A DNA stretch of 64,000 bases from Okamejei kenojei (GCA_035221665.1 CM069147.1:20336001-20400000), one strand, 5' to 3'. Shown: positions 693-62,115, counted from the first letter of the stretch. Made by a program: numbers and translations. Notes: generated by a model not told the origin, from the letters alone.

Positions 693-736
693 CGTTTGTG
701 CACCTCGCCTTGATTCCATCGAACTTCTATTAACGT
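693..736 (-). CDS. Gene A cytoplasmic exon 1 (DVNRSSMESRRGAQT)
   Basis: Acceptor cttgttttctttAG and donor GTaagg; 44 nt, phase 1 to 0; continues the frame of the TM exon at 1346-1444. Confidence 0.65.
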
Positions 737-1345
737 CTAAAGAAAACAAGACGATTAACGTTTGTGACAACAAAATGAATATTGTGTCTGAAGCTAATCA
801 AATGTATTGACTAAAGTAAGAACTCATGATGCCGCCGTGATATTTGAAAGTTTAGCAATACCGGTTTTTGCAATCTTGTGTTAGTGTTTTAACTTCGCAT
901 AATCGGTAATATGTAATCGAACTTGACTTTGAATTAAATTATCAAATGGTGATAGCGTGGCAGCAGCTGCGCCGCATTCCAAAATTACAATGAAAATTAA
1001 AAGTGTGGCAAGTTAGAGTAGTTTGATCACAAACAAAGTCAAGATCCATATCAAATTGGTTAAGATTGAATATTTTTAAAGAATAAAACGCAATCAATCA
1101 ATTCCCCGTGGTTGTGAAATAAAGACGAAGTCGATGAGCGAATAATTCGAACTTTGAAAAAAAAAATGTTTCCACCACATTTCAACCGTTAAATGTCATA
1201 ATGTTTTTGTAATGTGAATTTCATACCTAATAATGACCTGCAATATTTCTTCTTCTGCACGCGACGTGTATTAATTCTATGTTCCTGTTTTCTGAAATAC
1301 TATTAGGATGTTAATGTAATTGGCAAAAATAAATAACGGTCTTAC

Positions 1346-1444
1346 CATTTGTTGCGTTTAGTCTACGTACTGTCAAAATTATAATCGGGACTAAAATTGC
1401 CAATCCGCCCACTACACATCCGATAATCAGTGCGAGATTAGAGT
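1346..1444 (-). CDS. Gene A transmembrane exon (DSNLALIIGCVVGGLAILVPIIILTVRRLNATN), uncharged TM
   Basis: Acceptor tctgcttctcctgcAG and donor GTaag; 99 nt, phase 1-1; hydrophobic stretch followed by RR stop-transfer; clearly homologous to the gene D TM exon. Confidence 0.85.
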
Positions 1445-1639
1445 CTGCAGGAGAAGCAGATACATTTAAAATTGTAAAACATATAAATTAAGACACTGGT
1501 GAGAAATTGGGAGTCAGGAGGGCAGAGCACTCCGAATGTGTATTTTTATCCTTGGTGTATAAGCATTCCAATATATACCGAATGGAAAGAATTGCATTAA
1601 TTGCAAGTTAGCGAAGAAATATATATCGTCTGCTTTGAT

Positions 1640-1840
1640 CTGTCATTTTCAGATCTGACATCTCTTTACACCTCCACATCTCTAGTTTCCCTCTCCACTG
1701 ACTCTCAATCTGAAGAAGTGTCTTGACACGAAACGTCAGCCATTCCTTCTCTTCAGTGATACTGCTTGTCCCACTGTTACACCAGCATTTCATGTCAATT
1801 TTCGGTCTAAACTATCATTTGCAGTTCCTTCCAACACAGA
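1640..1840 (+). mobile_element. Penelope pLTR-derived short repeat with hammerhead core
   Basis: CTGAAGA-A-GTGTC-TT-GACAC-GAAACGTC at 1710-1737; related to the pLTR of the GIY-YIG-bearing element at 57723-58409. Confidence 0.6.
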
Positions 1841-3483
1841 TGTATGGTAAACACGTAAATCGTGTCACATAATGATCCAATGAGCTTCTCTTTGTGCAAG
1901 AAGGTTACTTATGAAGTGCAGACTTGCTTTTCTCTTAGCAGATTCCATATTTAGGACTGGCATACAGCACCTGATTCTACAGCTTTTAAGGTGTAACAAA
2001 AGCAACTTACCTGTACGTTCGGTTTTGCAAGCCTTTAACGTGTAAAAATATTTCAAGTAACTTTACAGGACGGCCTTCCAACAAAATTTGCCTCCAAATC
2101 GCAGATTATGAGAAATTAGGAGGGGCATAGCACGGAAACTGGTCCTTCCGCCAAACTCATCCATGCCGAGCAAGTTGCCCAACCGAGCTAGTCCCAGCTG
2201 CCTGCCGTAGGAACTCAGCAGGCTTAGCTGCATTGCTGGAGGGAAATGACGTTTCGAGTAGTGACCCTTCTTCAGATACCCTCCGCAGATGCTACCTGGG
2301 ATGCTAAGTATCTCCAGAACTTTGCAGATGCTGGAAACATAAAAAGCAATCTCCTTTGCCTCCTACTTACCTGCTCCTGGCACATATCTCTTCAAACCGT
2401 TCCTGTCCATATGGAGGTGACATGTACTTGGTGGAATTAAACTGACATTTAAGGGGAGGTTATTAGACAGAAGGGCATAGTGTGGGTAGTTGGAAGGTTC
2501 ATGGACAGTAAACGGATGAGAGTAATTACATTTGAATACAACTGGACGAATCTATTGACATTTCATGTTGGTAAACTTATAAGGACTAGAGGATAAGGTC
2601 AGATGACCTCTCCAGGCATTTTGCAAGATTGTGGTCGTTCCTCGATTATAATCCATTTCTTGCCTATTGTTCATACCTTTTGATTTTAAAGCAAAACTGA
2701 TCTGGGTAAAACTGACAAGGCCAGCACATCCAGTATTCCCAAATCATGCTTGTCCTTCACAATGTGGCAGTGAGCAGCATTTGTGAATCACTGCAGTCCT
2801 CTCAGTGAAGATAATTCCACAGTGATATTGAGTAATGAGTTCCAGGATCAAATCCAAGCGAACGATACGGACGATTTATTTACAAGTCATTACGGTGTGT
2901 GACTCGGAAGGGAATCTGCAGGAGATGGCGCGTTCCTATGCACCTGTTGCCCTTGATCATCATTTTCAAAAACTCTATTGATCTCAGCTCTGAAATACAA
3001 GATTATGGATCTGCGATGTTCCGAGGTACGGAATTACAAAGATTCGCGCATCTCTGGGAAGTGAAATTTCGCCTTAATATAAACGTTAAAAGCCGACTTC
3101 CTGTCTTAAAGAAAATATGTCTTGTTCGGAGCATTCTCCTTCCCCATTCGTCATATTATGTCCCTTTGTAGTCGAGAATTGAATGTTTACTTGCCCTTCT
3201 GTCTAATAACATCCCCTTAAATGTTTACTTGACACCACTGTCAAGTGCCTGAAAGTTTGCTGTTTCACACGCACGATATATATTAAACGTATAAATTAAT
3301 CTCACGCAGTTCTAATTGAGAAAGTATAGCGCTAAATTATGCATTAGGTTGCTTGCACATCGATATTCTACTGTGAATATATAGGTTAACGTTTACTACT
3401 CCACGTACAGTATTCGGCCTGATGTCATTTCTAAATCGGATCGGAGGTCTCCCTCTGTTCCCAGCTCTGTTTGCCTGTCTTAC

Positions 3484-3791
3484 CTGGCTTGACGGTGTAG
3501 TCGACTCTGGCCGCGACCGTAAGGGAGACATGTGACACTAGGCAGGTGTAAATATCAACGCGCCAGGTAGGCTTCGTTACTTCGAGAAAACTGGAAGCCA
3601 CATACAACCCCCTCCAACGCTACTGGTTGTTCACAGGTTCTTCCCGGTGAAAATTTGTTACACCATTTCTTTGCCAGGATATTTTCACTTCTTTCGTAAA
3701 AAAAGGCAGCCGTTTGACACACAAGTTTTTTTTTTTTGGCGGCGAAAACTGCCCATTAACTTGGCTAAATGCTCAGTTGGAGTTGGCGGAG
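3484..3791 (-). CDS. Gene A C1-set Ig domain exon (frameshifted by probable sequencing errors)
   Basis: Matches the intact C1 exon 27719-28009 apart mostly from single-base/homopolymer insertions; donor GTaag intact at 3483. Confidence 0.75.
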
Positions 3792-3884
3792 CATGTAACA
3801 GAAGAAAAAAAAAAGTTATGTTGTATGTCTTCTTTTCCATGTCAATGAATTACTTTGTCGTACAGCTTGTGAAGACATCGCAGT

Positions 3885-4330
3885 ATCAGACTGGGATAGG
3901 CTCGGCTTGTTACTCGCTAGAATTTAGAAGATTGAGGGGGGATCTTATAGAAACTTACAAAATTCTTAAGGGGTGGACAGGCTAGATGCAGGAAGATTTT
4001 GTTCCCGATGTTGGGGAGGTCCAGAAAACAAGGGGTCACAAGTTTAAGGATAAGGGGGAAGTCTTTTAGGACGGAGATGAGAAAAACCATTTTTCACACA
4101 TGGTGAATCTGTGGAATTATCTGCCACAGAAGGTAGTTGAGGCCAGTTCATTTGCTATATCTAAGAGGGAGTTAGATGTGGCCCTTGTGGCTAAAGGGAT
4201 CAAGGGTACGGAATGGAGAGAAAGGCAGGTACAGGATACTGAGTTGGATGATCAGCCCTGATCATATTGAATGGTGGTGCAGGCTCGAAGGCCGAATGGC
4301 CTACTCCTGCACCTATTTTCTATTTTTTGT
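3885..4330 (+). mobile_element. CR1 LINE 3' fragment
   Basis: YSLEFRRLRGDLIETYKILKG motif and CR1 3' UTR; paralogous copy at 28100-28532. Confidence 0.85.
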
Positions 4331-6914: not shown

Positions 6915-7303
6915 CAAATTAACAGTTGAGCCTGGAGCCCAGGTTTCCATCACCCGAATAGAATTGGCTGCTGATGTTTTTTTCACTGTTTTACAATAAT
7001 AAAACCCCCGGTTGGGTCCCCCCTACATTTTGCCATTTTCAGGAGAACAAAAATCTGGCACTGACCCCTTTTTGGTAATAAATTATTTTTTTTTTTTCCC
7101 CCTGCTGTCCTGGGTTTTTTCTATAAATTTGTCCCCCCCCCCCCCCCCTCTCTCCATCTCCACCAGTAAACATCAGGAGTAACTTGTTTTATTGAAGAAC
7201 CCGGGCCAGAAACATGGGATTGCATTGCCCTCCTCCCCTTGGGGACCCGTCAGGTTCTTTCCCGGGAAATTTGGGTCCACTTTTGCGAAGTTCACTTCGT
7301 TGG
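6915..7303 (-). CDS. Gene A V exon (garbled by homopolymer errors)
   Basis: Recognisable copy of 30621-30926, e.g. gagcctggagcc, caggagaacaaaaatctg, ctccaccagtaaacatcaggagtaacttg. Confidence 0.65.
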
Positions 7304-7548: not shown

Positions 7549-7619
7549 CTTGCCAAACTGTTCCACCAAAGGGTCCATGTAACCGAAAATGATGCCTTTT
7601 TTCACCTGTCCCCCCCCAT
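7549..7619 (-). CDS. Gene A leader exon (garbled)
   Basis: Copy of 31132-31186 (gtaccttgccaaactg...gatgc...ttcac); boundaries approximate. Confidence 0.55.
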
Positions 7620-23607: not shown

Positions 23608-23617
23608 CTAGCATGAT
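23608..23617 (-). CDS. Gene B terminal coding exon (RSC*)
   Basis: Acceptor gttttgtttctttgacAG; phase 2; TAG at 23608-23610. Confidence 0.65.
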
Positions 23618-26600
23618 CTGTCAAAGAAACAAAACATTTAAAGTTTATATCAACTGAATTATGTGATAAGTTTCTCGACCCCTTACGGTCTTACCTGTTT
23701 CCCATCACATGCTTGGAGGTCTTTCCATGTTCCTCTCTGCTCATTGTTTGCTCTGATGTCTCGACCAATCGGTCAACCTTTACCACGGAGCCTAGACGGG
23801 GAGATCAATTAATTGGGTACTATAGTGCAGATTTGGCGATCGTGAGTTATTTTGAATGTTAACATATTTTCTTACACCACTCATGTTATTATGTGCCGAC
23901 AAGATATCCAACGGGCGCCGATTCCCTATTGCCCATTTTGTGCTCCAGACTAAAATCGATTTGTAGCCTTTGTCTCCAGATGGGTTCAAAGTCAAGGTGA
24001 GTGAATCATTACTAAATTATACTCTGAATAATACCCTGGACGTCAGTTTTGAAGACATTCCCAACGCTTCATCGGACAGGGATCAGCCTCGGCTGGGCTC
24101 CACCCTTCAGAAGTAAAAACAATGGGATGGGGACCAATTCGGGCAGATGCAGGAATTATAACATTCAGCGGAGTCCCGACTGACCACAAACATGAAAGAA
24201 GGAACGGCAATAGTGCCGACAACTTTTACATCAAACGATTGGGAAATAACCAATTTATCCAATATGCATTGGCCCAAGATAAGCAGTTGCACAGAGCTGT
24301 AACTTGAGGAAGGAAACCGCTGCAAGTGGCGACATTTATTTTCCCATTAATATAATCGTTTTATAACAGTTCGATTAGAAGACGGTATTGTTATCCTTGA
24401 TATTAACGATGATGAACAATTTATTTTTCTAAGCTCTTTCAATGCCCTCTTTTGATTTGGGATTTTTACAAGTGAATTTGGAACACTGATGATAGCGGAG
24501 ACTTGACGGAATTGTTCTCCTCTGAGTCTGGGGATGGAGAACTGATATATTTCTGTACCATTTGGGGATCACGATCTTGTTATTAACTGTGTAAATTGTG
24601 GCCAAATAGCATCAATTCACGTAGCGCCATTTGATTCTCCGCAGCGCCATTTTACAGGAAAGTTGAAATTGAACTCTAGAATGAAGCTTGATTCACCTTT
24701 GGCAGAGCTTGATCCAAAAACAATTCGCAAGGTAGCCAACGCCAGTAAAATGATCAATGTACCTCCTACATTGCGAAGGACATGGACAACGCGAGCCGAA
24801 CCTGCAGACGTAAAAAATAATTGAGCGATAAGACAATTATCTCAAGTGAATGAACAAACTATAGAATTTTATTTGTGTAAAGAGCTTTATCAAGTGTCAC
24901 TATATTACAAAAATATCCAAATAAAATAGCAATATTAGGCAAATGGCCACTGTACAAAATAAACGCGAGATCTTGCTTCCAATATGAACAATATTGTTAT
25001 TGCATTAAATGTCAACGAGTGGTACATTTCCAAGTCAAGCTAGTGTGCGATTTGGAAGGCAGCCTGCAGGCCGTGGTGTTCACATGCACCTGCTGCCCGT
25101 GTCCTTGTTTGTGATCCAACCAATCCAGAAATCTATCAATGTCAATCCTCCCTTTTCAAACATCCTCAATGCTTCGAGGTAGTGAATTACGAAGATTCAC
25201 ACATCTGAGTAGAGTCATAGAGTCACAGAATATTACAGTGTGGAAACAGGCCCTTTGGCCCAACTCGCCTACACCGGCCAACAGTTGGCCAGCTACCCTA
25301 GTCCCACTTACCTGTGCTTGGTTCATAACCCTCCAAACCTTTCCTATCCATGTACCTGTCCAACTGTTTCTTAAACGATGGGATAGTCCCAGCCTCAACT
25401 ACCTTCTCTGGCAGCTTGTTCCATACACCCTCCACCCTCTGCGTGAAAATGTTACCCCTCGGATTCTTATTAAATATTTTCACCTTCACCTTGAATTAAT
25501 GTCCTCTGGTCCTCGATTCCCCTACTCTGGGTAGAATCTGTGCATCTAGCCGATCTATTCCACTCATAATTTTGTATACTTCCATAAGATCTCCTCTCAT
25601 CCTCCTACGCTCTATGGAATAGAGACCCAGCCTACTTAATGTCTCCCTATAGTTCACACCCTCTAGTCATGGCAACATCCTCATAAATCTGTTTAAGAAG
25701 GAACTGCAGATGCTGGAAAATCAGAGGTAGACAAATATGCTGGAGAAACTCAGTGGGTGAGGCAGCATCTATGGAGCGAAGGAAATAGGCAACATTTCAG
25801 GCCAAAACCCTTCCTCCTCGTAAATCTTTTCGGAAACCCTTTCAAGATTGACAATATATTTCCTATAACATGGTGCCCAGAACTGAACACAATATTCTAA
25901 ATGTGGTCTCACCAACGTCTTATACAACTGCAACATGACTTCCCAACTTCTATACTCAATACTCTGATGAAGGCCAATGTGGCAAAAGCCTTCTTGACCA
26001 CCTTATCTACCTGCGATTCGACCTTCAAGGAACCATGCACTTGTACTCCTAGATATCTTTGCTTTACAACACTACCCAGAGGCCTACCATTTACTGTTTA
26101 GGTCCTGCCCTTGTTCAACTTCCCAAAATGTAACACCTCACAATTTAATACAAATTCCATCAACCATTCCTCTGCCCACCTGGCCAAGCGATCCAGATCC
26201 TGCTGCAATCGTTTTCAACCTTCTTCACTCTCTGCAAAACCACTAACTTTTGTACCATCAGCAAACTTGCTAATCTTGCCCTGTATGTTCTCATCCAAAT
26301 CATTGATGTAGATAACAAACAGTAACGGGCCCAGCACCGAACCCTATGGCATACCACCAGTCACAGGCCTCCATTCTGAGAAGCAACCTTCCACTATCAA
26401 CCTCTGTTTCCTGCCATGGAGCTAATTTGCTATCCATTCAGCTATCTCTGCTTGGATCCTATGAGATCTAACCTTCCAAAACAGCCAACCATGCGGCACC
26501 TTGTCGAATGCCTTATTAAAACATCTACAGCTCTGCCCTCATCAACCTTTTTGCTCACGGCTTAAAAAAAAAATCAATCAGATTTGTGAGACACGATGTC

Positions 26601-29600
26601 CCATGTACAAAACCATGCTGACTGTCCTTAATCAGCCCATGCCCATCCAAATGCCTGTATATCCTATCCCTCAGAATACTTTCCAGTAACTTACCAACTA
26701 CAGATATTAAGCTCACCAGCCTATAGTTCCCAGCATTTTCCCTGCAGTCCTCTTGAAAAGAGGCACAACATTGTGCATACCTTTTGATTTTAAAGCAAAA
26801 CTGATCTGGGTAAAACTGACAAGGCCAGCACATCCAGTATTCCCAATTCATGCTTGTCCTTCACAATGTGGCAGTGAGCAGCCTTTGTGAATCACTGCAG
26901 TCCTCTCAGTGAAGATAATTCCACAGTGTTATTGAGTAATGAGTTCCAGGATCAAATCCAAGCGACGATACGGACGATTTATTTACAAGTCATTACGGTG
27001 TGTGACTCGGAAGGGAATCTGCAGGAGATGGCGCGTTCCTATGCACCTGTTGCCCTTGATCATCATTTTCAAAAACTCTATTGATCTCAGCTCTGAAATA
27101 CAAGATTATGGATCTGCGATGTTCCGAGGTACGGAATTACAAAGATTCGCGCATCTCTGGGAAGTGAAATTTCGCCTTAATATAAACGTTAAAAGCCGAC
27201 TTCCTGTCTTAAAGAAAATATGTCTTGTTCGGAGCATTCTCCTTCCCCATTCGTCATATTATGTCCCTTTGTAGTCGAGAGTTGAATGTTTACTTGCAAC
27301 ACCACTGTCAAGTGCCTGAAAGTTTGCTGTTTCACACGCACGATATATATTAAACGTATAAAATAATCTCACGCAGTTCTAATTGAGAAAGTATAGCGCT
27401 AAATTATGCATTAGGCTGCTTGCACATCGATATTCTCTCGTTTCCCTGATCGCTGACCAGTCTGAAGAAGGGTGTCGACCCGAAACGTCGCCTATCTCCT
27501 TCGCTCCTTCGATGCTGCTGCACCCGCTGAGTTTTCTCCAGCTTTTTGTGTAACCCTCGATTCTCCAGCATCTGCAGTTTCTTCGTTAACACTTTGTCTA
27601 TTCTACTGTGAATATATAGGTTAACGTTTACTACTCCACGTACAGTATTCGGCCTGATGTCATTTCTAAATCGGATCGGAGGTCTCCCTCTGTTCCCAGC
27701 TCTGTTTGCCTGTCTTACCTGGCTTGACGGTGTAGTCGACTCTGGCCGCGACCGTAAGGGAGACATGTGACACTAGGCAGGTGTAAATATCAACGCGCCA
27801 GGTAGGCTTCGTTACTTCGAGAAAACTGGAAGCCACATACAACCCCTCCACGCTACTGGTGTTCACAGGTTCTTCCCCGGTGAAAATTGTTACACCATTT
27901 CTTTGCCAGGATATTTTCACTTCTTTCGGAAAAAAGGCAGCCGTTTGACACACAAGTTTTGGCGGCGAACTGCCATTAACTTGGCTAATGCTCAATGGAG
28001 TTGGCGGAGCTGTAACAGAAGAAACAAAAAGTTATGTTGTATGTCTTCTTTCCATGTCAATGAATACTTTGTCGTACCGCTTGTGAAGACATCGCAGTAT
28101 CAGACTGGATAGGCTCGGCTTGTACTCGCTAGAATTTAGAAGATTGAGGGGGGATCTTATAGAAACTTACAAAATTCTTAAGGGGCTGGACAGGCTAGAT
28201 GCAGGAAGATTGTTCCCGATGTTGGGGAGGTCCAGAACAAGGGGTCACAGTTTAAGGATAAGGGGGAAGTCTTTTAGGACGGAGATGAGAAAACCATTTT
28301 TCACACATGGTGAATCTGTGGAATTATCTGCCACAGAAGGTAGTTGAGGCCAGTTCATTTGCTATATCTAAGAGGGAGTTAGATGTGGCCCTTGTGGCTA
28401 AAGGGATCTAGGGGTACGGAGAGAAGGCAGGTACAGGATACTGAGTTGGATGATCAGCCATGATCATATTGAATGGTGGTGCAGGCTCGAAGGGCCGAAT
28501 GGCCTACTCCTGCACCTATTTTCTATGTTTCTAAGTCCACATGGGTTATCGGTACGTTCACTTTTAAACTAATGGAGTTTATAGTTCGTCTTACCATGGA
28601 CAGTAAAATACATTCAAGGAATACATAGGAATGTGATGTTCGATATAAGTAATATGCGGATAATGTCCCATTGTTCTGAATGGAAGAGCCAGATTTAGCG
28701 CGCCGTAGAAGCTAGCAGCAATGTTTAGTAATTACATCAGCAATGACTGTGTTTAACATACTTGTTTCAAAGAATGATACAGGCCCGGTGTCGCCTTCAC
28801 GCTGACTATTAAACTCCTATTAATTAATCCAATTTTCCCGTCGCACCCATATCAACTGTCCTCATTCTTCACCGCCACAATCAATTATCAAGGGATAATT
28901 TACAGCTGGTTACCCTACCAACCAGCGAAAAGTTGGCAATGGATACGTTAGCGTAGCAACGGGGAAAAAAACAGGAATTTGCGAGATTATTAAACTGCAC
29001 ACAGACTAACGAATCCAGCCCTGTATATATTCACATCTCGCCAATGCATATGGTCTAGGGGCAGGGTTTGGCTTCATCTATCGATCTGAGGTTTGTCCCC
29101 ATAATAGTTCAGAGACTGGGATTGAGAGTTTAGATGAAGTAACTTTCACAAGGAAAACCTTTTTCCAGGCCGCGATATACGGTATGATTGTATATGGTAT
29201 GATTGAGTTATACTGACAATTGGTTGATAATAACAAATAAAGGTGATAGAACGTGCAAGCGACTTCCAATGTCACAACACATTTCATCTATATCTACTGC
29301 CTTTTCTAAATTTGCTCGATATATTGAACACATTCCATCTAAGTAAGATTCTATTGAACCGAACTCCATGTTTGTCATTTACGAGCACTGATATTTCTCA
29401 GTTAAATCTACAGTCAGTGTTTAGCTGGAAGGACAGCCTCTTGCTAAGGTGTATTGGGAGTTTAGTACAAACAATCTGTTGAACATCTAACTTTTAAATC
29501 TTCTTACATTCCGTTTTTGTACTAACAAGTTATTGAATACGGATCATTATTGTCTTCGGAAGAGAGTTTTGTGTTTATTCTCAACCTCAGCGAGTGCACT

Positions 29601-46295: not shown

Positions 46296-49200
46296 CTAGC
46301 ATGATCTGTCAAAGAAACAAAACATTTAAAGTTTATATCAACTGAATTATGTGATAAGTTTCTCGACCCCTTACGGTCTTACCTGTTTCCCATCACATGC
46401 TTGGAGGTCTTTCCATGTTCCTCTCTGCTCATTGTTTGCTCTGATGTCTCGACCAATCGGTCAACCTTTACCACGGAGCCTAGACGGGGAGATCAATTAA
46501 TTGGGTACTATAGTGCAGATTTGGCGATCGTGAGTTATTTTGAATGTTAACATATTTTCTTACACCACTCATGTTATTATGTGCCGACAAGATATCCAAC
46601 GGGCGCCGATTCCCTATTGCCCATTTTGTGCTCCAGACTAAAATCGATTTGTAGCCTTTGTCTCCAGATGGGGTATAACTACTAAATTATACTCTGAATA
46701 ATACCCTGGACGTCAGTTTTGAAGACATTCCCAACGCTTCATCGGACAGGGATCAGCCTCGGCTGGGCTCCACCCTTCAGAAGTAAAAACAATGGGATGG
46801 GGACCAATTCGGGCAGATGCAGGAATTATAACATTCAGCGGAGTCCCGACTGACCACAAACATGAAAGAAGGAACGGCAATAGTGCCGACAACTTTTACA
46901 TCAAACGATTGGGAAATAACCAATTTATCCAATATGCATTGGCCCAAGATAAGCAGTTGCACAGAGCTGTAACTTGAGGAAGGAAACCGCTGCAAGTGGC
47001 GACATCTAAATTACAACCGCTCTCATTTATTTTCCCATTAATATAATCGTTTTATAACAGTTCGATTAGAAGACGGTATTGTTATCCTTGATATTAACGA
47101 TGATGAACAATTTATTTTTCTAAGCTCTTTCAATGCCCTCTTTTGATTTGGGATTTTTACAAGTGAATTTGGAACACTGATGATAGCGGAGACTTGACGG
47201 AATTGTTCTCCTCTGAGTCTGGGGATGGAGAACTGATATATTTCTGTACCATTTGGGGATCACGATCTTGTTATTAACTGTGTAAATTGTGGCCAAATAG
47301 CATCAATTCACGTAGCGCCATTTGATTCTCCGCAGCGCCATTTTACAGGAAAGTTGAAATTGAACTCTAGAATGAAGCTTGATTCACCTTTGGCAGAGCT
47401 TGATCCAAAAACAATTCGCAAGGTAGCCAACGCCAGTAAAATGATCAATGTACCTCCTACATTGCGAAGGACATGGACAACGCGAGCCGAACCTGCAGAC
47501 GTAAAAAATAATTGAGCGATAAGACAATTATCTCAAGTGAATGAACAAACTATAGAATTTTATTTGTGTAAAGAGCTTTATCTAGTGTCACTATATTACA
47601 AAAATATCCATGGATTAAAATAGCAAAAAAAAATATTAGGCAAAATGGACACTGTACCAAAATAAACGCGAGATCCTTGCTTGCCAATATGAACAATATT
47701 GTTATTGCATTAAATGTCAACGAGTGGTACATTTCCAAGTCAAGCTAGTGTGCGATTTGGAAGGCAGCCTGCAGGCCGTGGTGTTCACATGCACCTGCTG
47801 CCCGTGTCCTTGTTTGTGATCCAACCAATCCAGAAATCTATCAATGTCAATCCTCCCTTTTCAAACATCCTCAATGCTTCGAGGTAGTGAATTACGAAGA
47901 TTCACACATCTGAGTAGAGTCATAGTCACAAAATATTACAGTGTGGAAACAGGCCCTTTGGCCCAACTCGCCTACACCGGCCAACAGTTGGCCAGCTACC
48001 CTAGTCCCACTTACCTGTGCTTGGTTCATAACCCTCCAAACCTTTCCTATCCATGTACCTGTCCAACTGTTTCTTAAACGATGGGATAGTCCCAGCCTGA
48101 ACTACCTTCTCTGGCAGCTTGTTCCATACACCCTCCACCCAAGATTGACAATATATTTCCTATAACATGGTGCCCAGAACTGAACACAATATTCTAAATG
48201 TGGTCTCACCAACGTCTTATACAACTGCAACATGACTTCCCAACTTCTATACTCAATACTCTGATGAAGGCCAATGTGGCAAAAGCCTTCTTGACCACCT
48301 TATCTACCTGCGATTCGACCTTCAAGGAACCATGCACTTGTACTCCTAGATATCTTTGCTTTACAACACTACCCAGAGGCCTACCATTTACTGTTTAGGT
48401 CCTGCCCTTCGAGAGATTCAACTTCCCAAAATGTAACACCTCACAATTTAATACAAATTCCATCAACCATTCCTCTGCCCACCTGGCCAAGCGATCCAGA
48501 TCCTGCTGCAATCGTTTTCAACCTTCTTCACTCTCTGCAAAACCACTAACTTTTGTACCATCAGCAAACTTGCTAATCTTGCCCTGTATGTTCTCATCCA
48601 AATCATTGATGTAGATAACAAACAGTAACGGGCCCAGCACCGAACCCTATGGCATACCACCAGTCACAGGCCTCCATTCTGAGAAGCAACCTTCCACTAT
48701 CAACCTCTGTTTCCTGCCATGGAGCTAATTTGCTATCCATTCAGCTATCTCTGCTTGGATCCTATGAGATCTAACCTTCCAAAACAGCCAACCATGCGGC
48801 ACCTTGTCGAATGCCTTATTAAAACATCTACAGCTCTGCCCTCATCAACCTTTTTGCTCACGGCTTAAAAAAAATCAGTCAGATTTGTGAGACACGATGT
48901 CCCATGTACAAAACCATGCTGACTGTCCTTAATCAGCCCATGCCCATCCAAATGCCTGTATATCCTATCCCTCAGAATACTTTCCAGTAACTTACCAACT
49001 ACAGATATTAAGCTCACCAGCCTATAGTTCCCAGCATTTTCCCTGCAGTCCTCCTGAAAAGAGGCACAACATTTGCCACCCACCAATCCTCTGGCACCTC
49101 TCTTGTGTTTAAGGACGACTTATACATTTCATCCAGGGCCTCCACAATTTCCTCTCTTGTTTCCCCGCAATGTCCTCTGATATATCTGATTAGGCCCCGG

Positions 49201-52200
49201 AGATTTGTCTACCTTCAAACACGACAATACCTTCAGTACTTCCACGACAGTACTTCCTCGATGCTCTCATGCCACTTCCAGTAACTGCTCCAATTTCCTC
49301 TATCCTACTGTTTTCTCCTCGGTAAATACTGAGGAGAAATACTCTTTGAGGACATTACCCATCTCCCGTGGCTCCACACAGAGGTGAGCGCTTTTATTCC
49401 TGAGAGGTCCCACTCTCTCTCTAGTTATTTTTTCCCCCATTTTTGCCCGCCCTTCTAGTTTACTCCTTAGTTCCCGAGACTCCTACAGGGATGCACTTAT
49501 CCCAACTGCCTATATCTGTCCCATGCATTCTTCTTGTTTTTGACTAACGTCTCAATTTCCCTTGTCAGCCAAGCTTCCTTACGTTTGCCTGCTTCGCTTT
49601 TCACTCTAACGGGGACGTACACATCCTGAGCTCTCTTCAGTACACTTTTAAAAACATCCCACTTGGCCGATGTTCCTTTCCCCTCAAATAACCTGCTCCA
49701 GTCAACTTGAGCTAGACCTTCTCTCATACCCTCAAAATAGTGAAATATCTCAACATTACAAAGTAAATTCCCGACTATATATAATGAACGTGTACCTCTA
49801 TCCCAATCTCACTGATTGTGTCCTTTTGATGATTTTTTGTTTGCTAACACCTCTGTCAAATGCCTTGAAGGTTTAGCCACGTCACAGACATTATAAATAT
49901 TGAAGATGCAGATATAATTTAGAAAACAGATTATAGCATTTGATGCGTCAGTTTGCCCGAACTCCCGCGGTGAATAAACACGGTTCACTTTCAACCCTTC
50001 TCGTCGTGTTTGAGCTGTATTCAACAATATTTATAAATCGGATCGGAGGTCTCCCTCTGTTCCCAGCTCTGTTTGCCAGTCTTACCTGGCTTGACGGTGT
50101 AGTCGACTCTGGCCGGGACCGTAAGGGAGACATGTGACACTAGGCAGGTGTAAATAACAACGCGCCAGGTAGGCTTCGTTACTTCGAGAAAACTGGAAGC
50201 CTCATACAACCCCTCCACGCTACTGATATTTACAGGTTCTTCCCGGGTGGAAATTGTTACACCATTTCTTTGCCAGGATATCTTGACTTCCTTCGGAAAA
50301 AATGCAGTCGTTTTACACACAAGTCTGGGCGGCGAACTGCCTTTAATTGGACTAATATTCGGGGGAGTAGGCGGCGCTGGAACAGAAGAAAAAATATGTT
50401 GAATATTTTCTTTCCGTTGCCTCGTCACACCGCGACCTTGCACTCCCACCATCAGATCGTTATCGGTACAATCGCTTTTACACTCACTGATTTGTCTTTG
50501 TTTTAGATTTCACCTTATTGTGGACGGTGAAATATATCCAAGGTTTGGATACATAAGGAATCCGAGGTTTGGATGTAGGTAATATGCGGGATTCTGAACA
50601 ATCCCCAATGTTCTGAAGTGCCAATCAGTAGCGTGGCGGGGGGTGTTTCATCGCTGGTAACAACTTTTTCTGTTCAGTTCAAAAATGACTGTTTTTTCGA
50701 GATTTGGTGCAAAGAATGATACGTGTAGAGTGGAATATCACAGAATAACACAGCACAGCACAGCGCAGCCCAGATGACCTACTGCGTCATTAAACCTCCA
50801 TCTCCACTTATTCAATGTTCATCTCCTGTCAACTTTCCTCTTCACTCCTCACCACGACCAATCAACCGGGACAATTCACAGAGGCTAGTTTTCCTACCAA
50901 CCTGTGGCATGCGGAATAAACCGGAGCACCGGAGGAACGTCTACGCGTTGAAGGGGAGAAGTATATATGGACGCCCGCAGGATCTGGGTCGAACTTGGGT
51001 CGCTGAAGTTGTGGGCAGCGTTAATCAATGTAGCACTGTATATATCCAGATTTCACCAATATCGATAATCAAGAGGCAGGCCGTAGTTGATTAGATGAGA
51101 GCTTGGTCCACACTTTAGTACCTTGGATGGAGGGCTCAAGTGATACAGCTTTTGGCCCGGGAGGCTTCTCCACAACGCTAACTGCGCAATTTGAAGGCAT
51201 TATAGAGTTACACTAATAATTATTAAGAAGGAACTGCAGATGTCTGAAGAATGGTCTCGACCCGAAATGTCACCCATTCCTTCTCTCAGAGGTGCTGCAT
51301 GTCCCGCTGAGTTACTCCAGCTTTTTGTGTCTATCTCCTGATAATTAGTATCCCCGTGCAAATATTAGACGCTTCTTCAATAAGTACAATACGTGAATAG
51401 ACTACGTCTCTTCTACAATTTTGCCATTTTCCAAATGTTCTCGGTTTGCTGAAGACGCTTGAATAAGATTTCACTGATATCAGCTCAGAGTGGGTCTTTT
51501 GCGAACGCTGATCTACCTCCGTCGGATCTACAATCAGTAGGTAGCTAGTAGGAGGCCTCTTGTTAAATCACTCTGCGTGTTGATGACAACCTTTCGAGTT
51601 TATCATCGATAATGAATAATTGGGGGCAAACGTGAGAGACTGAGGGTTGAGTCCTGTAAGAATATAATTGTATGGACAGGAGCCCTGGCGTTTGCCCCAA
51701 ATGCCGTGAAATTTTACTCGTATTTTACAAAGGTTTACAAAGGTTACACAGGTGTTTAAATGAGAATCCTCGGAGTGAGACGGTGATATTCTGTCCCTGG
51801 AGTAAGAATCTAGCAAATCAAAACTCTCAACGGTTTATAGGATTCATCTCTATAATAACCATGGTGGTTTGATACGGGGTTCAGCTTCGTTTACAGCCGA
51901 CGAATAAATGAGTAGAATATTTGCCGAGGCCGCTCTGTTGTTCAATTCAACCGTGGGTGGTTTGTGCGTCAGGTCTCTGTGTCACAAACCCTGTTGTCAC
52001 ATACCCCACGATACCCAATCCAAATGAATATTCTAACATCCCAATCTCGAGAGATCAATTTATTTTTTTGTTTCCAGACTTTAAGTCAATAAAGTTACTG
52101 ATTTCGGAGATAATTTGTAAGGTAGCGCGTAAAAAGGGAAAATGATGTGTGAATCAATATGGACTGTAAACACTATTCTTGTGAGATTGTAACCACTATT

Positions 52201-53476
52201 GGCGTAGAGTGGTGGCGTTTGAATATTGTTTTAAAGATCCTATCCAGGATGGAGGTGTTATGCCGTTGTCTTCGGGAGTAGAAATGGGACATTCCTATCA
52301 CAACTAAGACTAAAACATCCACGTGGCTTCAACATTTTTCATTTTCCATGAAAAACAATTAGAAAACAACTTTTAATCTAAGACATTTGATTTAATACAT
52401 TCAAGCACACCATGGGGGTAATAAAGCGTGAATCTGGATCGTGGGCAATAACGCGAAAGTGGACAGCGCGAATCTACAGGAGAACACTGGAAAATTAACT
52501 GGAGAAGTACGAAATGAGGAAAAGAACATTTTCTCTCTACACAGATGCTGACCCACTTACGGATTATTTTAATGTATCAGATTTGGAACGGTTTGGTTTT
52601 ATAGTATAAATCTTATCGAGTTTTTGCCGAGTTATAAAATGTCATGTTATTCATATCAGCGAGCTTTACTTGTATCCCGGGAAGATTAAAATTTCTCCCT
52701 TACAGGGCACTTACCGAACACAGTGAGCCTTGAGCCAGGTCCATCTCCGATAGATTGCTGCTGATGTTTCACTTTACAATAATAAACCCCGGAGTCCGTG
52801 ACTTTCGCATTCAGGAGAACAAAATCTGCACTGCCCTTTTTGGTATAAATTATTTTTCTGCTGTCTGGTTCTATAAATGTCTTCTCGCCCCATCTCCACC
52901 AGTAAACATCAGGAGTAACTTGTTGTATTGAGAATGTGCAGAACATGGAAGCATTGTCTCCTCTGTGGACGGTCAGGTCTTTGGGGAATTGGTCCACTTT
53001 GGTTGAAGTTACTTCGAAGGCTGCCAGAAATTAAGCAAGAATACTGAAAACAGTTGGCCATCCGGACAAGCAAAAATGAACAAAGAGTTGAAAAATTCAA
53101 AATAAACTAGAAACGGCCATAAACGAATTAAGAAGCACTGTAACTAAATTCGTGCTTGGTAACCAACATTCACTATTCTAAGGAGATACAAGGAACTGCA
53201 CTCACTGGTTTACAACAAAAGACACCCAGTGCTGGAGTAACTCAGCGGCCAAGAGTCTTCTTTAGATCCTGAAGTAGTTTCGACCCGAAACGTCACCTAT
53301 CCACGTTCTATTTAGATGCTGCCTGACCCACGGAGTTACTCCAGAACGTTGTGTGTTTTTTTAATAGAATATTATAAAACATATCATGAGATTCGGAAAC
53401 CCCACATAAATCTAAAAGTACCATGCCAAACTGTAGCCAGAAGAGTCATGTATCGAACTGATGCTCCAAACGACAT
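46296..53476 (-). CDS. Gene C: VJ-C1-TM Ig-superfamily receptor, activating type, 287 aa. Exons 53422-53476, 52715-53020, 50086-50376, 47388-47492, 46383-46479, 46296-46305
   Basis: Same exon sizes as gene B (55/306/291/105/97/10), all GT-AG and in frame; leader MSFGASVRYMTLLATVWH. Confidence 0.87.
46383..46479 (-). CDS. Gene C cytoplasmic exon
   Basis: Same sequence as 23695-23791. Confidence 0.75.
47388..47492 (-). CDS. Gene C TM exon with Arg
   Basis: Same sequence as 24697-24801. Confidence 0.85.
47912..49736 (-). mobile_element. CR1 LINE in the gene C C1-TM intron (donor of the duplication breakpoint)
   Basis: ORFs 48865-49086 and 49497-49727 (LAQVDWSRLFEGK...AWLTREI). Confidence 0.87.
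50086..50376 (-). CDS. Gene C C1-set exon
   Basis: APPTPPNIS...LVCKTTAFFPKEVKISW...YTCLVSHVSL; 291 nt. Confidence 0.93.
52715..53020 (-). CDS. Gene C VJ-type V exon
   Basis: ...DSGVYYCKVKHQQQSIGDGPGSRLTVF; 306 nt, AG/GT intact. Confidence 0.95.
53185..53365. mobile_element. Inverted pair of Penelope pLTR fragments in the gene C leader-V intron
   Basis: ctggagtaactcagcgg ... gagttactccag inverted arms around a degenerate core (53269-53294); absent from gene B. Confidence 0.55.
53422..53476 (-). CDS. Gene C leader exon
   Basis: ATG, 55 nt, donor GTactt. Confidence 0.8.
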
Positions 53477-57708: not shown

Positions 57709-57722
57709 TCACAACGAAGCAA

Positions 57723-58409: not shown

Positions 58410-60029
58410 TCACAACGAAGCAATCCGCGAATACTCAGACAAATGGAATTAGTGCTTCATTCCAATCCCTTGCTGATATTGTATTTTTGGCTGCAGGACC
58501 TCGTACTTTTTTTTGCAGCTTGGTTGTTCATTGCTCTATTAACCCTTCCATATTCGACTTTAACTGAACCGTGATTCGACCTTAACTGAAATTTACACGC
58601 ATGCACTCTGTAACTAGACTAAGAGGACTGAAAATTATGCTTGTTATTTCTGGTCCACAGAACCAGGACACAGATGACAACTTTAACGGCCTTATTGTCA
58701 AATGCCTAATACCACAATGTGCATTTTCTGGTTAATATTATGAGGTCTTTATACCACACCAGACAACAAAAGTAAAGATCCATCACATAACAGAGACTGA
58801 TAATTTTTCGATTAAAAAAAGCAGATACATGAAATCCATTATAAATACATAGAATGCTCTGTTTTCACGGATGTGGGTTTACTGAGTACTTCCAGTATTC
58901 TCATTTTATAATGGATTTGATTCAATTTTGCATGGAAGTGTGAGAATTCGAGCTTGGTCTCCTCCCTTGCGCCAGATTAAAACTTTTGACCTGAGATACA
59001 CTGTGGTCTAAAATTGAAAAGTAATCGTTTGCGCAGATGAATCGAAAAAATCCGGGATAACTCTTCATGATAGGAACTTGATAACGAGGTTCCCATGTGC
59101 ATAACTATCTCCCCAATTGTACTGTGATTGCCTGAAAGGTAATTCTTATGATTCGTTTGTGCATCCCATGTACAATAAGCGAGTTCGGTATCTCGATAAA
59201 AACGTAAGGAATTATGGGATTTGTCAAAGGTCATTCGAGATAATAAAAGCGAACGCAGCGCTGTATAAAGTGTGTATACATCGTTTACTATTCTACCAAG
59301 GAATTAATCTAGAATTCTGTCAACTCGATTTCTTCCTTTCTTATGCTGCTGTTCACACACTACTTACATGACTTACACTACTTACACAGTCCCAGTTCCA
59401 GTTCAGTTCATTAATCTGCAATTGTGAGATATTCAAAGAATTTATTATTTTCATTGAATCCTTAATGTGTACTAAAATAAGAAAATATTACATGTTTGAA
59501 ACATTGTCTTATTCATAATTTATGTGTAAAAATATATTTAATCTGAGGCAGGCAACGAATTGGTGTGATGTGGGCTGCTGCTTTACCTACAGGCGGTGCG
59601 AATGTACCATTCAAGCAAAGAATAATCTCCGAGGAAAACTGAGTAAAGGGTTGGCCCTGTGAAGGAGCCACCAATCCGATATAAGACATTTAACTGCGAA
59701 ATGCCTGCCCTATAGTATTGGATAGATTGAGTGGAGGGTCTGTGTTGTTCCAAGTTTGCGGTGGTTGCAGTGCATTTCCCCCAGCCATCTCGCCTAGTGC
59801 ACATTAACCAGCACAGTTTGCCAGCCCTTGTTAGCAGAGGCTCTTTCTGCAGGTGTTATCTGAAGCCCAAAGGTTTTGTGGAGGTTCTGCGTTAGGATCG
59901 GTCATGCAGCGAGCTATTGAGAGGGCTGTCAGATCAGATCAGCCCAGGTTGCCGAGTGGCCAAAGGGTGGATTTTAATGGGTCGTTATTAAACTGCTCCA
60001 TCTGTGCGGCATCACCAGCTCTCTCTCTC

Positions 60030-61276
60030 CCAGAATTTATTGACAAATGTGTACGTAAAAATGTCTAAATGTAATGAGGAGTGTATCCGTGAATGTAAAA
60101 GTGTAATGTTCAGCGAAATGGAAACATTCTCGGAGTTTGAGTGTGTGGTTTTGTCGAACCATGAAATCAAAGGGCAAAAATCTGACAGACATAAACACAC
60201 AAACACACACTCACGCAGAGTTTTAAAAGTAGACTAGACCAAATGCAGACCCGTTGGTTCTGGTCCCCTAACGTGCTTCAGACCCCGAGTAAGGTGGGAG
60301 AGGGAGGGGGGGGGGGGGGGGGGGGGGGGGGAGAGGGAATGGCGAGAGGGGGGCAGGGGAGGAGGTGGGTAGGGAGGGGGGTGGGGGTGGGGTTGTTACT
60401 GAACTGAACTCACTGTGGAATGAATCCATTAACAGAGTCACTCTGCTGCTGGATTCGAAGTTGTCCCTGCCTTCCCTCTGGCTGACAGGCCGTTAAAGCC
60501 GGCTCTGTCATGCTGGCTGAAGTCAAAGATCGGCTGTGCTCCCGCTGTTTTTCCGAGCACAGCAAGAAGCAGCGGTGGAAGAGGCCTTCTTTGGCTTGAG
60601 CCAGTGTGAGAGAGTCGGTCCCGGGGGCAGTGGAGGTGAGCCGGGAGGTGAGCAGATCAATCACCTCTCCACCACTGCTTTTCGCCGTGCTCAGAAAAGC
60701 AGCAGGGGAACAGCCGATCTTTGCCTTGAGCCAGCGTGAGAGAGCCGGCCCGGGGGGAGGGCCGCGGAGTGGAGGTGAGCTGGGCGGCAGCAGCGAAAAT
60801 CGCCCGTGAAAGACAGGCCGTTGAGGCGCCGGCTCTGTCACGCTGGCTCAAGCCAAATATGGGCTGCTCCCCCTGCGAAAAGCAGTGGGGGAAGAGCTGA
60901 TCTCAGCGCCGGGTGGCAGCAGCGAAAATCACCAGCAATAGAAGAAAAATGGCGGCGCTTTCGGAGTAGAGCCGGGCGGCAGCAGCCGTTATAGTGGCTG
61001 GCCAGCAAGAGGAGACAAAATGAGTGAGTGGGTAGGCGGGGGGGGGGGGGGGGGGGGGTGTGAAGGATTTTATTAAAAAAATGTGTACATAAAAATGTCT
61101 AAATGTAATGAGCAGTGCATTAGTGAATGTAAAAGTTAGATTGTAAAAGGCTAGAGAAATGGAAAAATTCTCAGAGTTTGAGCGTGTGGTTTTGGCGGAC
61201 CATGGAATCAAAGGCCAAAAATCTTATCTGAAAAAAAATGGAATGTGACATACACCTACAAACACCTACAAACACA
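60030..61276 (+). mobile_element. Head-to-tail copies of a non-autonomous repeat (rolling-circle-like)
   Basis: 60030-60232 is repeated at 61065-61276; a new unit starts ACTAGACCAAATGCAGACCCGTTGG at ~60232. Confidence 0.55.
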
Positions 61277-61638
61277 NNNNNNNNNNNNNNNNNNNNNNNN
61301 NNNNNNNNNNNNNNNNNNNNNNNNNNNNNNNNNNNNNNNNNNNNNNNNNNNNNNNNNNNNNNNNNNNNNNNNNNNNNNNNNNNNNNNNNNNNNNNNNNNN
61401 NNNNNNNNNNNNNNNNNNNNNNNNNNNNNNNNNNNNNNNNNNNNNNNNNNNNNNNNNNNNNNNNNNNNNNNNNNNNNNNNNNNNNNNNNNNNNNNNNNNN
61501 NNNNNNNNNNNNNNNNNNNNNNNNNNNNNNNNNNNNNNNNNNNNNNNNNNNNNNNNNNNNNNNNNNNNNNNNNNNNNNNNNNNNNNNNNNNNNNNNNNNN
61601 NNNNNNNNNNNNNNNNNNNNNNNNNNNNNNNNNNNNNN
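61277..61638. other. Assembly gap (362 N)
   Basis: N run. Confidence 1.
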
Positions 61639-61687
61639 TGGCGCAGATTAAATAATTTTCTGTTCAGATTCAGTGTTTGACTGACAA

Positions 61688-61885
61688 TAGGAAATAGACA
61701 ATAGACAATAGGTGCAGGAGTAGGCCTTCGGCCCCTTGAGCCAGCACCGCCATTCAATGTGATTGTGGCTGATCATCCACAATCAGTATCCCGTTCCTGC
61801 CTTCTCCCCATATCCCCTAACTCCGCTATCTTTCAGAGCCCTATTTAGTTCTCTCTTGAAGAGCTCTATCTAGCTCTCTCTTGAA
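61688..61885 (-). mobile_element. CR1 3' end
   Basis: caatagacaatag tail and ggtgcaggagtaggcc; reverse complement of the CR1 3' UTR. Confidence 0.8.
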
Positions 61886-62007
61886 AGATAGGCGGCTATT
61901 ATCAATTTTCAAGCAGTAAATGACTTGAAAATAGAATGTATCCCGTCTCTGATCAATGAACAGAACTGATAAATTGCGGTACTTGGTAAAATATGTAACG
62001 TTCTTAC

Positions 62008-62115
62008 CCTGTTGCGCCTTTAATTTGAATCTTGTGAAAAATATAATCAGAATTACAATTAACAGTCCGCCCACTATACATCCAAGAATTTGTGTTTTGT
62101 CAGTGGTTTCTGGAT
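62008..62115 (-). CDS. Gene D TM exon (DPETTDKTQILGCIVGGLLIVILIIFFTRFKLKAQQ); upstream exons not seen in the window
   Basis: Acceptor gtcctatgtttcgccAG and donor GTaag; 108 nt, phase 1-1; homologous to the gene A TM exon. Confidence 0.85.

What the first reader, a model, noticed from the sequence alone, without database searches (positions are those of the whole stretch)
693..62115. Cluster of non-rearranging, antigen-receptor-like VJ-C1 membrane receptors forming a candidate paired-receptor family
Seen: four tandem minus-strand genes. B and C splice into complete 287-aa proteins with a leader, one V exon already containing a J-like motif (YYC...GDGPGSRLTV), one C1-set domain (FFP..V.ISW, YTCLVSH), a TM and a tail. 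No RSS lies near the V 3' end. Two TM classes coexist: Arg-containing (B, C) and uncharged (A, D). Known: C1-set domains are largely limited to Ig, TCR, MHC, b2m, tapasin and SIRP. Germline VJ(-C1) molecules such as SIRP, NKp30, PRARP and shark UrIg are discussed as relatives of the pre-RAG antigen-receptor ancestor. Inference: this is a chondrichthyan expansion of single V-C1 receptors with activating and non-activating members, possibly uncharacterised.
Basis: partly seen in the sequence, partly recalled or inferred. Interest (0 to 1): 0.9.

Follow-up and report, generated by a model that had tools for sequence, protein, structure and literature searches.

The report
Ray SIRP-like VJ-C1 receptor gene cluster
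The window holds real, non-rearranging immune-receptor genes (an antibody-like tip, one constant domain, a membrane anchor) of a family found only in sharks, rays and chimaeras; public databases list the family under inconsistent automatic names and I found no paper on it, so it is uncharacterised rather than unseen.

Summary
Genes B and C each splice in silico into a 287-codon open frame from six exons with canonical AG/GT sites. The exons are a split leader, one V exon ending in a J-like GxGSxLxV strand, one C1-set exon, an Arg-bearing TM exon and a Tyr-free tail. No RSS lies nearby. B versus C gives dN/dS of 0.16 (V) and 0.37 (C1).

Gene A is not shown to be broken. Its V exon and the 5' third of its C1 exon lie in an insertion-rich, low-quality stretch (about 3.7-12.5 kb), and the clean part of its C1 exon is identical to B. 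Only the TM exon of gene D is in the window. The N gap touches no exon.

B is a chimera made by a ~22-24 kb tandem duplication: an A-like ectodomain joined to the C-like Arg TM and tail.

The family has 44 database proteins, all chondrichthyan, in at least 15 species. RefSeq names them SIRP-alpha-like, NCR3LG1-like, TAPBPL-like or Ig-lambda-like. Relatives carry ITIM tails or Arg TMs, which supports a paired-receptor reading. Orthology to SIRP is not shown. No inhibitory tail and no transcript were found here.

This scan already noted the same family on other DNA of this genome.

The parts
53422..53476 (-). Gene C leader exon (ATG at 53476; 55 nt, phase-1 donor)
   Evidence: The leader resembles the family leaders (YMxLLAxxW) seen.
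52715..53020 (-). Gene C V exon with a germline J-like G strand (DGPGSRLTV), followed directly by a GT donor
   Evidence: The AF2 model has pLDDT 91, and the top Foldseek hits are shark VNAR, CD79b, TCR V-alpha and V-lambda. G93 and G95 are invariant in 36 family sequences.
50086..50376 (-). Gene C C1-set exon (FFPKEVKISW, YTCLVSH)
   Evidence: Pfam C1-set 1.2e-13. The best PDB chain is shark UrIg2. The AF2 model has pLDDT 86, and the Foldseek top hits are MHC class II C1 domains and beta-2-microglobulin.
47388..47492 (-). Gene C TM exon, 105 nt: SARVVHVLRNVGGTLIILLALATLRIVFGSSSAK. One Arg sits in the outer part of the TM and a second at the inner face.
   Evidence: It does not match the canonical family TM profile. 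By hand alignment, the Arg aligns with the conserved Cys of GCxxGG.
46296..46479 (-). Gene C predicted tail exons 5 (46479-46383) and 6 (46305-46296, including the stop). They encode a Tyr-free tail, GSVVKVDRLVETSEQTMSREEHGKTSKHVMGNRSC.
   Evidence: The support is splice-site logic only; there is no homologue or RNA evidence.
23608..31186 (-). Gene B, six exons: leader 31186-31132, V 30926-30621, C1 28009-27719, TM 24801-24697, tail 23791-23695 and 23617-23608
   Evidence: The model is 287 codons. The TM and tail are identical to C. The V exon is 94% and the C1 exon 85% identical to C at the protein level.
26770..26776 (.). Junction of the tandem duplication inside the C1-to-TM intron of B. 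Below it B matches the C unit; above it B matches the A unit.
   Evidence: HSPs; three-way alignment.
3484..3790 (-). Gene A C1 exon. The 3' two thirds are identical to B. The 5' third carries insertions, an in-frame stop and a spoiled acceptor.
6926..7303 (-). Gene A V exon remnant, lying in low-quality, homopolymer-inflated sequence (approximate bounds)
1346..1444 (-). Gene A TM exon (DSNLALIIGCVVGGLAILVPIIILTVRRLNATN), canonical family type with an uncharged core
   Evidence: family TM profile E 2.2e-8.
62008..62115 (-). Gene D TM exon (DPETTDKTQILGCIVGGLLIVILIIFFTRFKLKAQQ), canonical type. It is the only part of D in the window.
   Evidence: family TM profile E 2.6e-10.
61277..61638 (.). 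Assembly gap in the 3' region of gene D. It was neither filled nor looked up.
   Evidence: The nearest exon is 370 bases away.

Best explanation
The window is part of a tandem cluster of a chondrichthyan-specific family of germline-joined VJ-C1-TM immunoglobulin-superfamily receptors. These work like mammalian SIRPs, that is, as paired innate receptors.

Shown:
- B and C are intact open frames under purifying selection.
- Each encodes a short, C''-less V domain with a conserved J-like strand, one C1-set domain and a TM helix with an Arg at the place where canonical members carry Cys.
- A and D carry the canonical uncharged TM.
- B arose when a ~22-24 kb tandem duplication, with both ends in C1-to-TM introns, joined an A-type ectodomain to the C-type Arg TM and tail.

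Inferred:
- The Arg-TM forms signal through an ITAM adaptor with an acidic TM residue (of the FcR-gamma or DAP12 kind).
- The canonical-TM forms, which in other species carry three or four ITIM/ITSM tyrosines, recruit SH2 phosphatases.
- Both classes see the same unknown ligand.
For: - Exon models and frames.
- Pfam and structure.
- Selection: dN/dS between B and C is 0.16 for V and 0.37 for C1, at dS of about 0.19.
- Family membership: V is up to 67% and C1 up to 57% identical to RefSeq proteins of Heterodontus and Mobula. There are 44 family proteins, all from chondrichthyans.
- Discreteness: family domains score about 140 bits on the family profiles, against at most 55 bits (C1) and 31 bits (V) for any other protein among the fetched hits.
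- Signalling classes in relatives: ITIM-type tails (TAYATL, TVYAQT, LTYAAL, AVYAEV) with the GCxxGG TM, and Arg-TM short-tail forms, in Scyliorhinus and Heptranchias.
- Pairing in this window: the A and B ectodomain exons are identical where the sequence is reliable, yet sit on different TM exons. The duplication junction is clean.
Against: - No transcript evidence. The only runs listed covered repeats and had zero depth on every exon.
- The tail exons rest on splice-site logic alone.
- No ITIM/ITSM tail exon was found for A or D.
- The adaptor pairing is inferred from a single residue.
- Part of the cluster is poorly assembled, so the copy number and the state of A are uncertain.
- The similarity to SIRP is not specific. 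Light chains score higher than SIRP-alpha d1-d2 on the family profile (69 against 55 bits), and no bona fide SIRP was among the ten named of the 150 best C1 hits.
Confidence: 0.65

Rival explanations
1. The family is a relic of the antigen-receptor lineage proper: a single V-C1 chain closer to Ig light chain, IgNAR or UrIg than to SIRP. It would act as a dimeric recognition molecule, with the signalling variants secondary.
For: - On the family profile, lambda and kappa light chains (69 and 67 bits over V+C) and UrIg2 (51+25+37 bits) score as high as or higher than SIRP-alpha (55+43).
- UrIg2 is the best PDB chain for the C1 exon.
- The V model's top Foldseek hits are shark VNAR domains.
- IgNAR V is the best non-family V among the fetched proteins (31 bits).
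- The split leader and the single VJ exon match those of UrIg and UrIg2 (PMC12227049).
Against: - The differences in score are small, and Foldseek E-values are flat across many V domains.
- The aromatic residue before GxG and the Gln of WYRQ, both typical of dimerising antigen-receptor V domains, are replaced ([ND]GxG, WW[KR]xGE).
- There is no stalk Cys in B or C.
- The ITIM and Arg-TM variants are those of innate paired receptors.
- Linkage to the MHC or the AgR complex could not be tested.
Confidence: 0.15
2. B and C are silent or artefactual copies. The duplication would be recent or an assembly error, so that only one functional Arg-TM gene, or none, exists here.
For: - The 3' halves of B and C are 97-100% identical, and their TM and tail exons are identical.
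- A low-quality stretch and a gap lie within the cluster.
- No reads were laid on the exons.
Against: - Both frames are open over 287 codons and all splice sites are intact.
- The ectodomains of B and C differ at 18 and 26 nucleotide positions, with dN/dS well below 1.
- B carries repeat insertions that A and C lack (27430-27563 and 25437-25843).
- The junction is a unique sequence.
- The runs laid were contigs that covered only repeats, so they say nothing about absence.
Confidence: 0.12
3. The family is a B7/butyrophilin-type ligand (B7-H6/NCR3LG1-like) or a tapasin-related molecule, as some RefSeq names say.
For: Several members have automatic names such as 'NCR3 ligand 1-like' and 'tapasin-related protein-like'. 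These families also have a V plus C1-like architecture.
Against: - Members of the same family, and even isoforms in one 90% cluster, receive four or five different names, so the names reflect weak best hits.
- The J-like GxGSxLxV strand is invariant in the family and, to my knowledge, is not a B7 feature.
- No B7-H6 or tapasin chain is in the top 60 PDB hits of the exons or the family profile.
- There is no tapasin N-terminal domain.
Confidence: 0.05

Closest known systems
SIRP family (SIRP-alpha, beta, gamma; PTPNS1)
   Same: - Non-rearranging V domain with a J-like strand, followed by C1-set domain(s) and a TM.
- The family splits into members with multi-tyrosine ITIM tails and members with a basic TM residue and a short tail (SIRP features as in PMC12975943; family tails).
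- The family profile aligns to SIRP-alpha d1-d2 (55 bits) and d3 (43 bits), with a shared VPPT-L start and FYPxxLxxTW.
- Many RefSeq models are auto-named SIRP-alpha-like.
   Different: - One C1 domain, not two.
- A short, C''-less V domain.
- No specific sequence affinity (light chains score as high).
- Orthology, synteny and CD47 binding are untested.
- No bony-vertebrate member was found.
UrIg and UrIg2 (elasmobranch non-rearranging Ig-like genes; PMC12227049, PDB 9dmx)
   Same: Cartilaginous-fish genes with a split leader, a single VJ exon and C1-set domains. UrIg2 is the best PDB chain for the C1 exon (2.1e-21 summed; 32 bits for its C1).
   Different: UrIg and UrIg2 have three to eleven C domains, are single genes linked to the MHC or the AgR complex, and resemble IgG Fc. 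This family has one C1 domain, is multigene, and has ITIM and Arg-TM signalling variants. Identity is only about 30%.
Ig light chains and the IgNAR V domain
   Same: V-C1 two-domain layout. These give the highest profile scores (67-69 bits). VNAR is the top structural match of the V model and shares the missing C'' strand.
   Different: No RSS and no separate J segment. The family is membrane-anchored with signalling motifs, and [ND]GxG replaces FGxG.
PRARP (Fu et al. 2019, J Immunol 202:1992, cited in PMC10751288) and NKp30
   Same: Germline VJ domains discussed as relatives of the antigen-receptor precursor. As I recall, PRARP also has a VJ-C-TM layout. As I recall, NKp30 also has an Arg in its TM.
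   Different: No PRARP or NKp30 sequence could be fetched for a direct test. No single-C1 protein from a bony vertebrate was recognised among the 150 best C1 hits out of 1.84 billion representatives (six short Ig fragments, P0084-P0147, were never given a species). NKp30 has no C1 domain.

Membership tests
Chondrichthyan VJ-C1 receptor family (unnamed; RefSeq 'SIRP-alpha-like' and other names) | High-scoring match of both the V and the C1 exon to family members, far above any other protein | tested here: met
   V is up to 67% and C1 up to 57% identical. Family domains score about 140 bits, against at most 31 bits (V) and 55 bits (C1) for non-family proteins. In the V tree the window genes are sister to a batoid clade (SH-aLRT 86).
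Chondrichthyan VJ-C1 receptor family (unnamed; RefSeq 'SIRP-alpha-like' and other names) | Architecture of leader, one VJ exon, one C1 exon and a TM, with invariant Cys/Trp cores and an invariant GxG | tested here: met
SIRP family | V-set domain with a J-like G strand, encoded without rearrangement | tested here: met
SIRP family | Three-domain ectodomain (V plus two C1-set domains; PMC12975943) | tested here: not met
   B and C have a single C1 exon between the V and TM exons. Most family proteins have one C1 domain.
SIRP family | Paired signalling: ITIM tail versus a basic TM residue with a short tail | tested here: inconclusive
   B and C have the basic TM and a Tyr-free tail. ITIM tails were seen only in relatives from other species and not in this window.
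SIRP family | Orthology by tree or synteny with the SIRP locus; CD47 binding | not testable with these tools
Profile similarity is not specific.
Rearranging antigen receptors (IgL, TCR, IgNAR) | V segment ending in an RSS, with separate J segment(s) | tested here: not met
   V and J are in one exon that ends at a GT donor. No RSS lies near the V exons.
UrIg/UrIg2 | VJ exon followed by three or more C1 domains; single gene linked to the MHC or AgR complex | tested here: not met
   There is one C1 exon, in a multigene tandem cluster. Linkage was not testable.
PRARP | Sequence relationship to chicken PRARPA/B and their orthologues | not testable with these tools
   No reference sequence was available. 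No bony-vertebrate hit reached E 1e-3 in the word-seeded searches, which is only weak evidence against.

The most novel reading that the evidence does not exclude
The family may not be a SIRP offshoot but an independent, chondrichthyan-retained descendant of the single V-C1 chain that preceded RAG invasion. Its C''-less, germline-joined V domain would be the closest living non-rearranging relative of the IgNAR / NAR-TCR V domain. The family would then show how such a chain served as a paired innate receptor before or beside rearrangement.
Probability: 0.1. Interest if true: 0.85.

Novelty: new variant of a known kind. Interest (0 to 1): 0.55.

Why it matters
Non-rearranging VJ-C1 genes of cartilaginous fish are now central to the debate on how antibodies and T-cell receptors arose (UrIg and UrIg2, PMC12227049; PMC10751288). 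That debate treats them as rare relics.

A multigene VJ-C1 family with inhibitory and activating forms, present from chimaeras to rays, would change that picture in two ways. First, the layout would be seen to have been used widely for innate recognition in the oldest jawed vertebrates. Second, it would offer either an outgroup or a candidate ancestor for SIRPs.

This window adds a concrete case of how an activating partner is made. A tandem duplication with both ends in C1-to-TM introns fused one gene's ectodomain to another gene's Arg-bearing anchor.

The limits are that the family is already in public annotation, that function, ligand and expression are unknown, and that this scan has met the family several times in this genome.

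Tried and rejected
Laid on 47300-53299, they covered only repeats. This is no evidence either way.
- Reaching bony vertebrates: a single-protein search and two profile searches returned only chondrichthyan proteins. These searches are word-seeded, so distant kin can be missed. An earlier agent's note of amphibian members was not reproduced.
- Looking for SIRP among the 150 best C1 hits: the one protein labelled 'substrate 1-like' (a lizard protein, P0124) has a V domain without a J motif and three C1 domains. The amphibian and reptile hits are Ig heavy chains.
- ITIM tail exons for A and D: motif scans and a family tail profile found nothing. A 'TDYAKL' ORF at 890-907 is in the wrong phase for the TM donor.
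- Shark-type terminal exon 'RL[AIV]ISA': absent downstream of B and C.
- Reading A as a true pseudogene: rejected as unproven because of the sequence quality.
- Joined spliced proteins were not sent to any search, fold or complex tool. Exons were searched one by one by reference, and joining was done only inside scripts to count frames and lengths.
- The gap was left as it is.


Full report
**What is in the window.**
The window is 64 kb with one N run at 61277-61638. A self-comparison shows a tandem duplication. Bases 2666-26770 (unit 1) match 26770-49076 (unit 2). Identity is 94-99% over most of the length and about 77% in one stretch.

Six-frame motif and tblastn scans place family exons on the minus strand only:
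- C1-set exons near 3.5, 27.8 and 50.2 kb;
- V exons near 30.8 and 52.9 kb, plus a remnant near 7.2 kb;
- canonical TM exons at 1.4 and 62.1 kb.

The rest is largely repeats, including LINE reverse-transcriptase fragments and a Penelope-like GIY-YIG ORF.

**Genes B and C.**
Each gene has a leader exon of 55 nt, a V exon of 306 nt, a C1 exon of 291 nt and a TM exon of 105 nt. All have AG/GT sites and phase-1 boundaries, the classical IgSF pattern, and together give 252 codons without a stop.

Two further small exons with good splice sites (C: 46479-46383 and 46305-46296; B: 23791-23695 and 23617-23608) close the frame at exactly 287 codons. These tail exons rest on splice logic alone. If the TM donor is read through, the frame gives 26 more residues.

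Joined sequences were built only inside scripts, to count frames. Every search used single exons by reference.

**Domains.**
- *V exon.* It scores equally as V-set and I-set (about 1e-8 to 1e-9). It ends in ...YYCKVKHQQQSIGDGPGSRLTV, followed at once by GTAAGT. In a 36-sequence family alignment, the two glycines of GxG are invariant, as are the Cys pair, the Trp, and the Asp and Tyr before the second Cys. The proper register of the J-like motif is therefore [ND]-G-x-G-S-x-L-x-V.
- *V structure.* An AlphaFold model built with the family alignment has pLDDT 91 and no C'' strand. Its best Foldseek matches are shark VNAR domains, CD79b, TCR V-alpha and V-lambda, all at similar E-values.
- *C1 exon.* It is C1-set at 1.2e-13. 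Its model has pLDDT 86 and matches MHC class II membrane-proximal domains and beta-2-microglobulin.
- *RSS.* A heptamer-spacer-nonamer scan found 8 weak sites against 5.6 expected, none at a V exon.

The genes are therefore germline-joined and do not rearrange.

**Are they real genes?**
Between B and C the V exons differ at 18 of 303 bases (dN 0.030, dS 0.191). The C1 exons differ at 26 of 288 bases (dN 0.070, dS 0.186). Flanking intron sequence is only 68-72% alike beside the V exon and about 69% 5' of the C1 exon, though 92% over the 60 bases 3' of C1. This is the signature of coding sequence kept by selection.

No expression evidence could be obtained. The three runs offered held only repeats of the stretch.

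**Gene A.**
The frame of A is broken in the assembly. However, the alignment to B shows that the last two thirds of the C1 exon and the intron after it are identical to B. From about 3690 upward, every difference is an extra base in or beside a homopolymer. The V exon shows the same pattern. From 4 to 12 kb, 18-30% of bases lie in runs of four or more, against 4-9% in most other 1-kb bins, with 0.10-0.20 in a few. I read this as uncorrected long-read sequence, not as decay, so whether A is intact is unknown.

The TM exon of A (1444-1346) is clean and of the canonical family type.

**Gene D and the gap.**
Only the TM exon of D (62115-62008) is present. Its C1 and V exons must lie beyond the window's end. 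The gap begins 370 bases 3' of that exon, and no modelled exon touches it. The family profiles find nothing next to it. Continuity across it could not be tested, so the tail of D cannot be modelled. The gap was neither filled nor looked up.

**Two TM classes and the origin of B.**
A and D read ...IIGCVVGGLAILV... and ...ILGCIVGGLLIVIL.... They match a profile of the family TM at E 2e-8 and 3e-10. B and C read ...VVHVLRNVGGTLIILLALATLRIVF... and do not match it. Aligned by hand on the GG pair, the first Arg falls on the conserved Cys. The catshark protein P0163 likewise has GR in place of GC.

The duplication junction sits at 26770-26776 in the C1-to-TM intron of B. Below it B follows the C unit; above it B follows the A unit. 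B is therefore a chimera with an A-type ectodomain on the Arg-type anchor and tail.

It is the textbook route by which activating partners of inhibitory receptors arise.

**The family.**
An exhaustive HMMER search of 1.84 billion representatives with the C1 exon returned mostly multi-C1 proteins, which rank high by summed score. It also returned a set of single-C1 proteins of 200-400 residues, at 40-57% identity, with the C1 domain at about residues 122-215.

These proteins, and the 44 proteins found with one of them and with a 30-sequence profile, all come from cartilaginous fish. The genera are Heterodontus, Scyliorhinus (two species), Heptranchias, Mustelus, Mobula (two species), Narcine, Hypanus, Hemitrygon, Pristis, Leucoraja, Amblyraja and Callorhinchus. 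One of the 44 (P0194, an ENA contig) carries no species label.

RefSeq names them SIRP-alpha-like, SIRP-beta-1-like, NCR3 ligand 1-like, tapasin-related-like, Ig lambda-like, TCR beta-like or HLA-DO-beta-like, sometimes within one 90% cluster. None of the eight successful searches of the held library found a paper that treats the family.

Members fall into two main kinds:
- canonical-TM forms with tails carrying TAYATL/TEYAPL, TVYAQT, LTYAAL and AVYAEV/TLYADV/TEYAEL;
- short forms with an Arg in the TM (Scyliorhinus P0052 and P0164; Heptranchias P0165, P0174 and P0130).

In a V-domain tree, the window's two genes are sister to a clade of ray and sawfish sequences (SH-aLRT 86). This suggests a batoid genome.

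**Relation to known families.**
On the family profile the per-domain scores are:

| Target | Score (bits) |
|---|---|
| Lambda light chain (V+C) | 69 |
| Kappa light chain (V+C) | 67 |
| SIRP-alpha d1-d2 | 55 |
| SIRP-alpha d3 | 43 (shares VPPT-L and FYPxxLxxTW) |
| UrIg2 | 51, 25 and 37 |

For the C1 exon alone, UrIg2 is the top PDB chain. Among the fetched proteins, family domains score about 140 bits and the best outsiders 55 bits (C1) and 31 bits (V, an IgNAR heavy chain).

The family is thus a discrete clade, roughly equidistant in sequence from light chains, UrIg2 and SIRP. It fails the three-domain criterion of SIRPs and the multi-C criterion of UrIg. It resembles SIRPs in how it is built to signal (PMC12975943).

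**Mechanism.**
Shown:
- the architecture;
- conservation and purifying selection;
- the two anchor types;
- the chimeric origin of B.

Inferred from established knowledge of paired receptors:
- the Arg pairs with an acidic residue of an ITAM adaptor;
- canonical members inhibit through SH2 phosphatases;
- near-identical ectodomains on opposite anchors see one ligand.

No inhibitory tail was found in this window, so the pairing is documented here only at the level of the anchors.

**Verdict.**
The finding is real and correctly described for B and C. It is overstated for A and D. The family is not unseen, since it is in public annotation and has been noted repeatedly by this scan in this genome. 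It remains unnamed and unstudied as far as I could search.

Noticed in passing
window 3690-12500: Insertion-rich, homopolymer-inflated sequence: 18-30% of bases lie in runs of 4 or more, against 4-9% in most other 1-kb bins. It matches unit 2 at only about 77% identity, purely through extra bases. It looks like uncorrected long-read sequence used in the assembly, and it makes gene A look like a pseudogene.
   Followed up: yes
window 26770-26776: Clean junction of a ~22-24 kb tandem duplication inside the C1-to-TM intron, with a few bases shared by both sides. It created gene B as an A-ectodomain / C-anchor chimera.
   Followed up: yes
window 62131-62230 and 62522-62622: A 101-base inverted repeat at 99% identity, lying immediately 5' of the D TM exon in the intron. 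It could be a MITE-like element or an assembly feature.
   Followed up: no
window 27430-27563, 40268-40362, 57716-57847: Copies of a short repeat of about 95-135 bases (94-98% alike), one of them inserted in B's C1-to-TM intron but absent from A. This shows that A and B are distinct loci.
   Followed up: partly
window 54458-56600 (+), 48868-49119 (-), 58055-58456 (-): Retroelement debris: reverse-transcriptase fragments (RVT_1, just below Pfam's threshold) and a GIY-YIG ORF of the Penelope kind. One RT fragment sits in C's C1-to-TM intron.
   Followed up: partly
window 890-907 (-): A short ORF ending ...ITDYAKLKH-stop resembles the last tyrosine motif of family tails (TDYAEL, SEYAKL). It is in the wrong phase to follow A's TM exon directly. 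It may be part of A's tail, reached through an exon I could not find.
   Followed up: partly
family proteins P0163, P0154, P0049, P0185, P0186 (other species): Charged residues (Arg or Glu) replace or flank the conserved TM Cys in several unrelated family branches. This suggests repeated, independent switches of anchor type.
   Followed up: no
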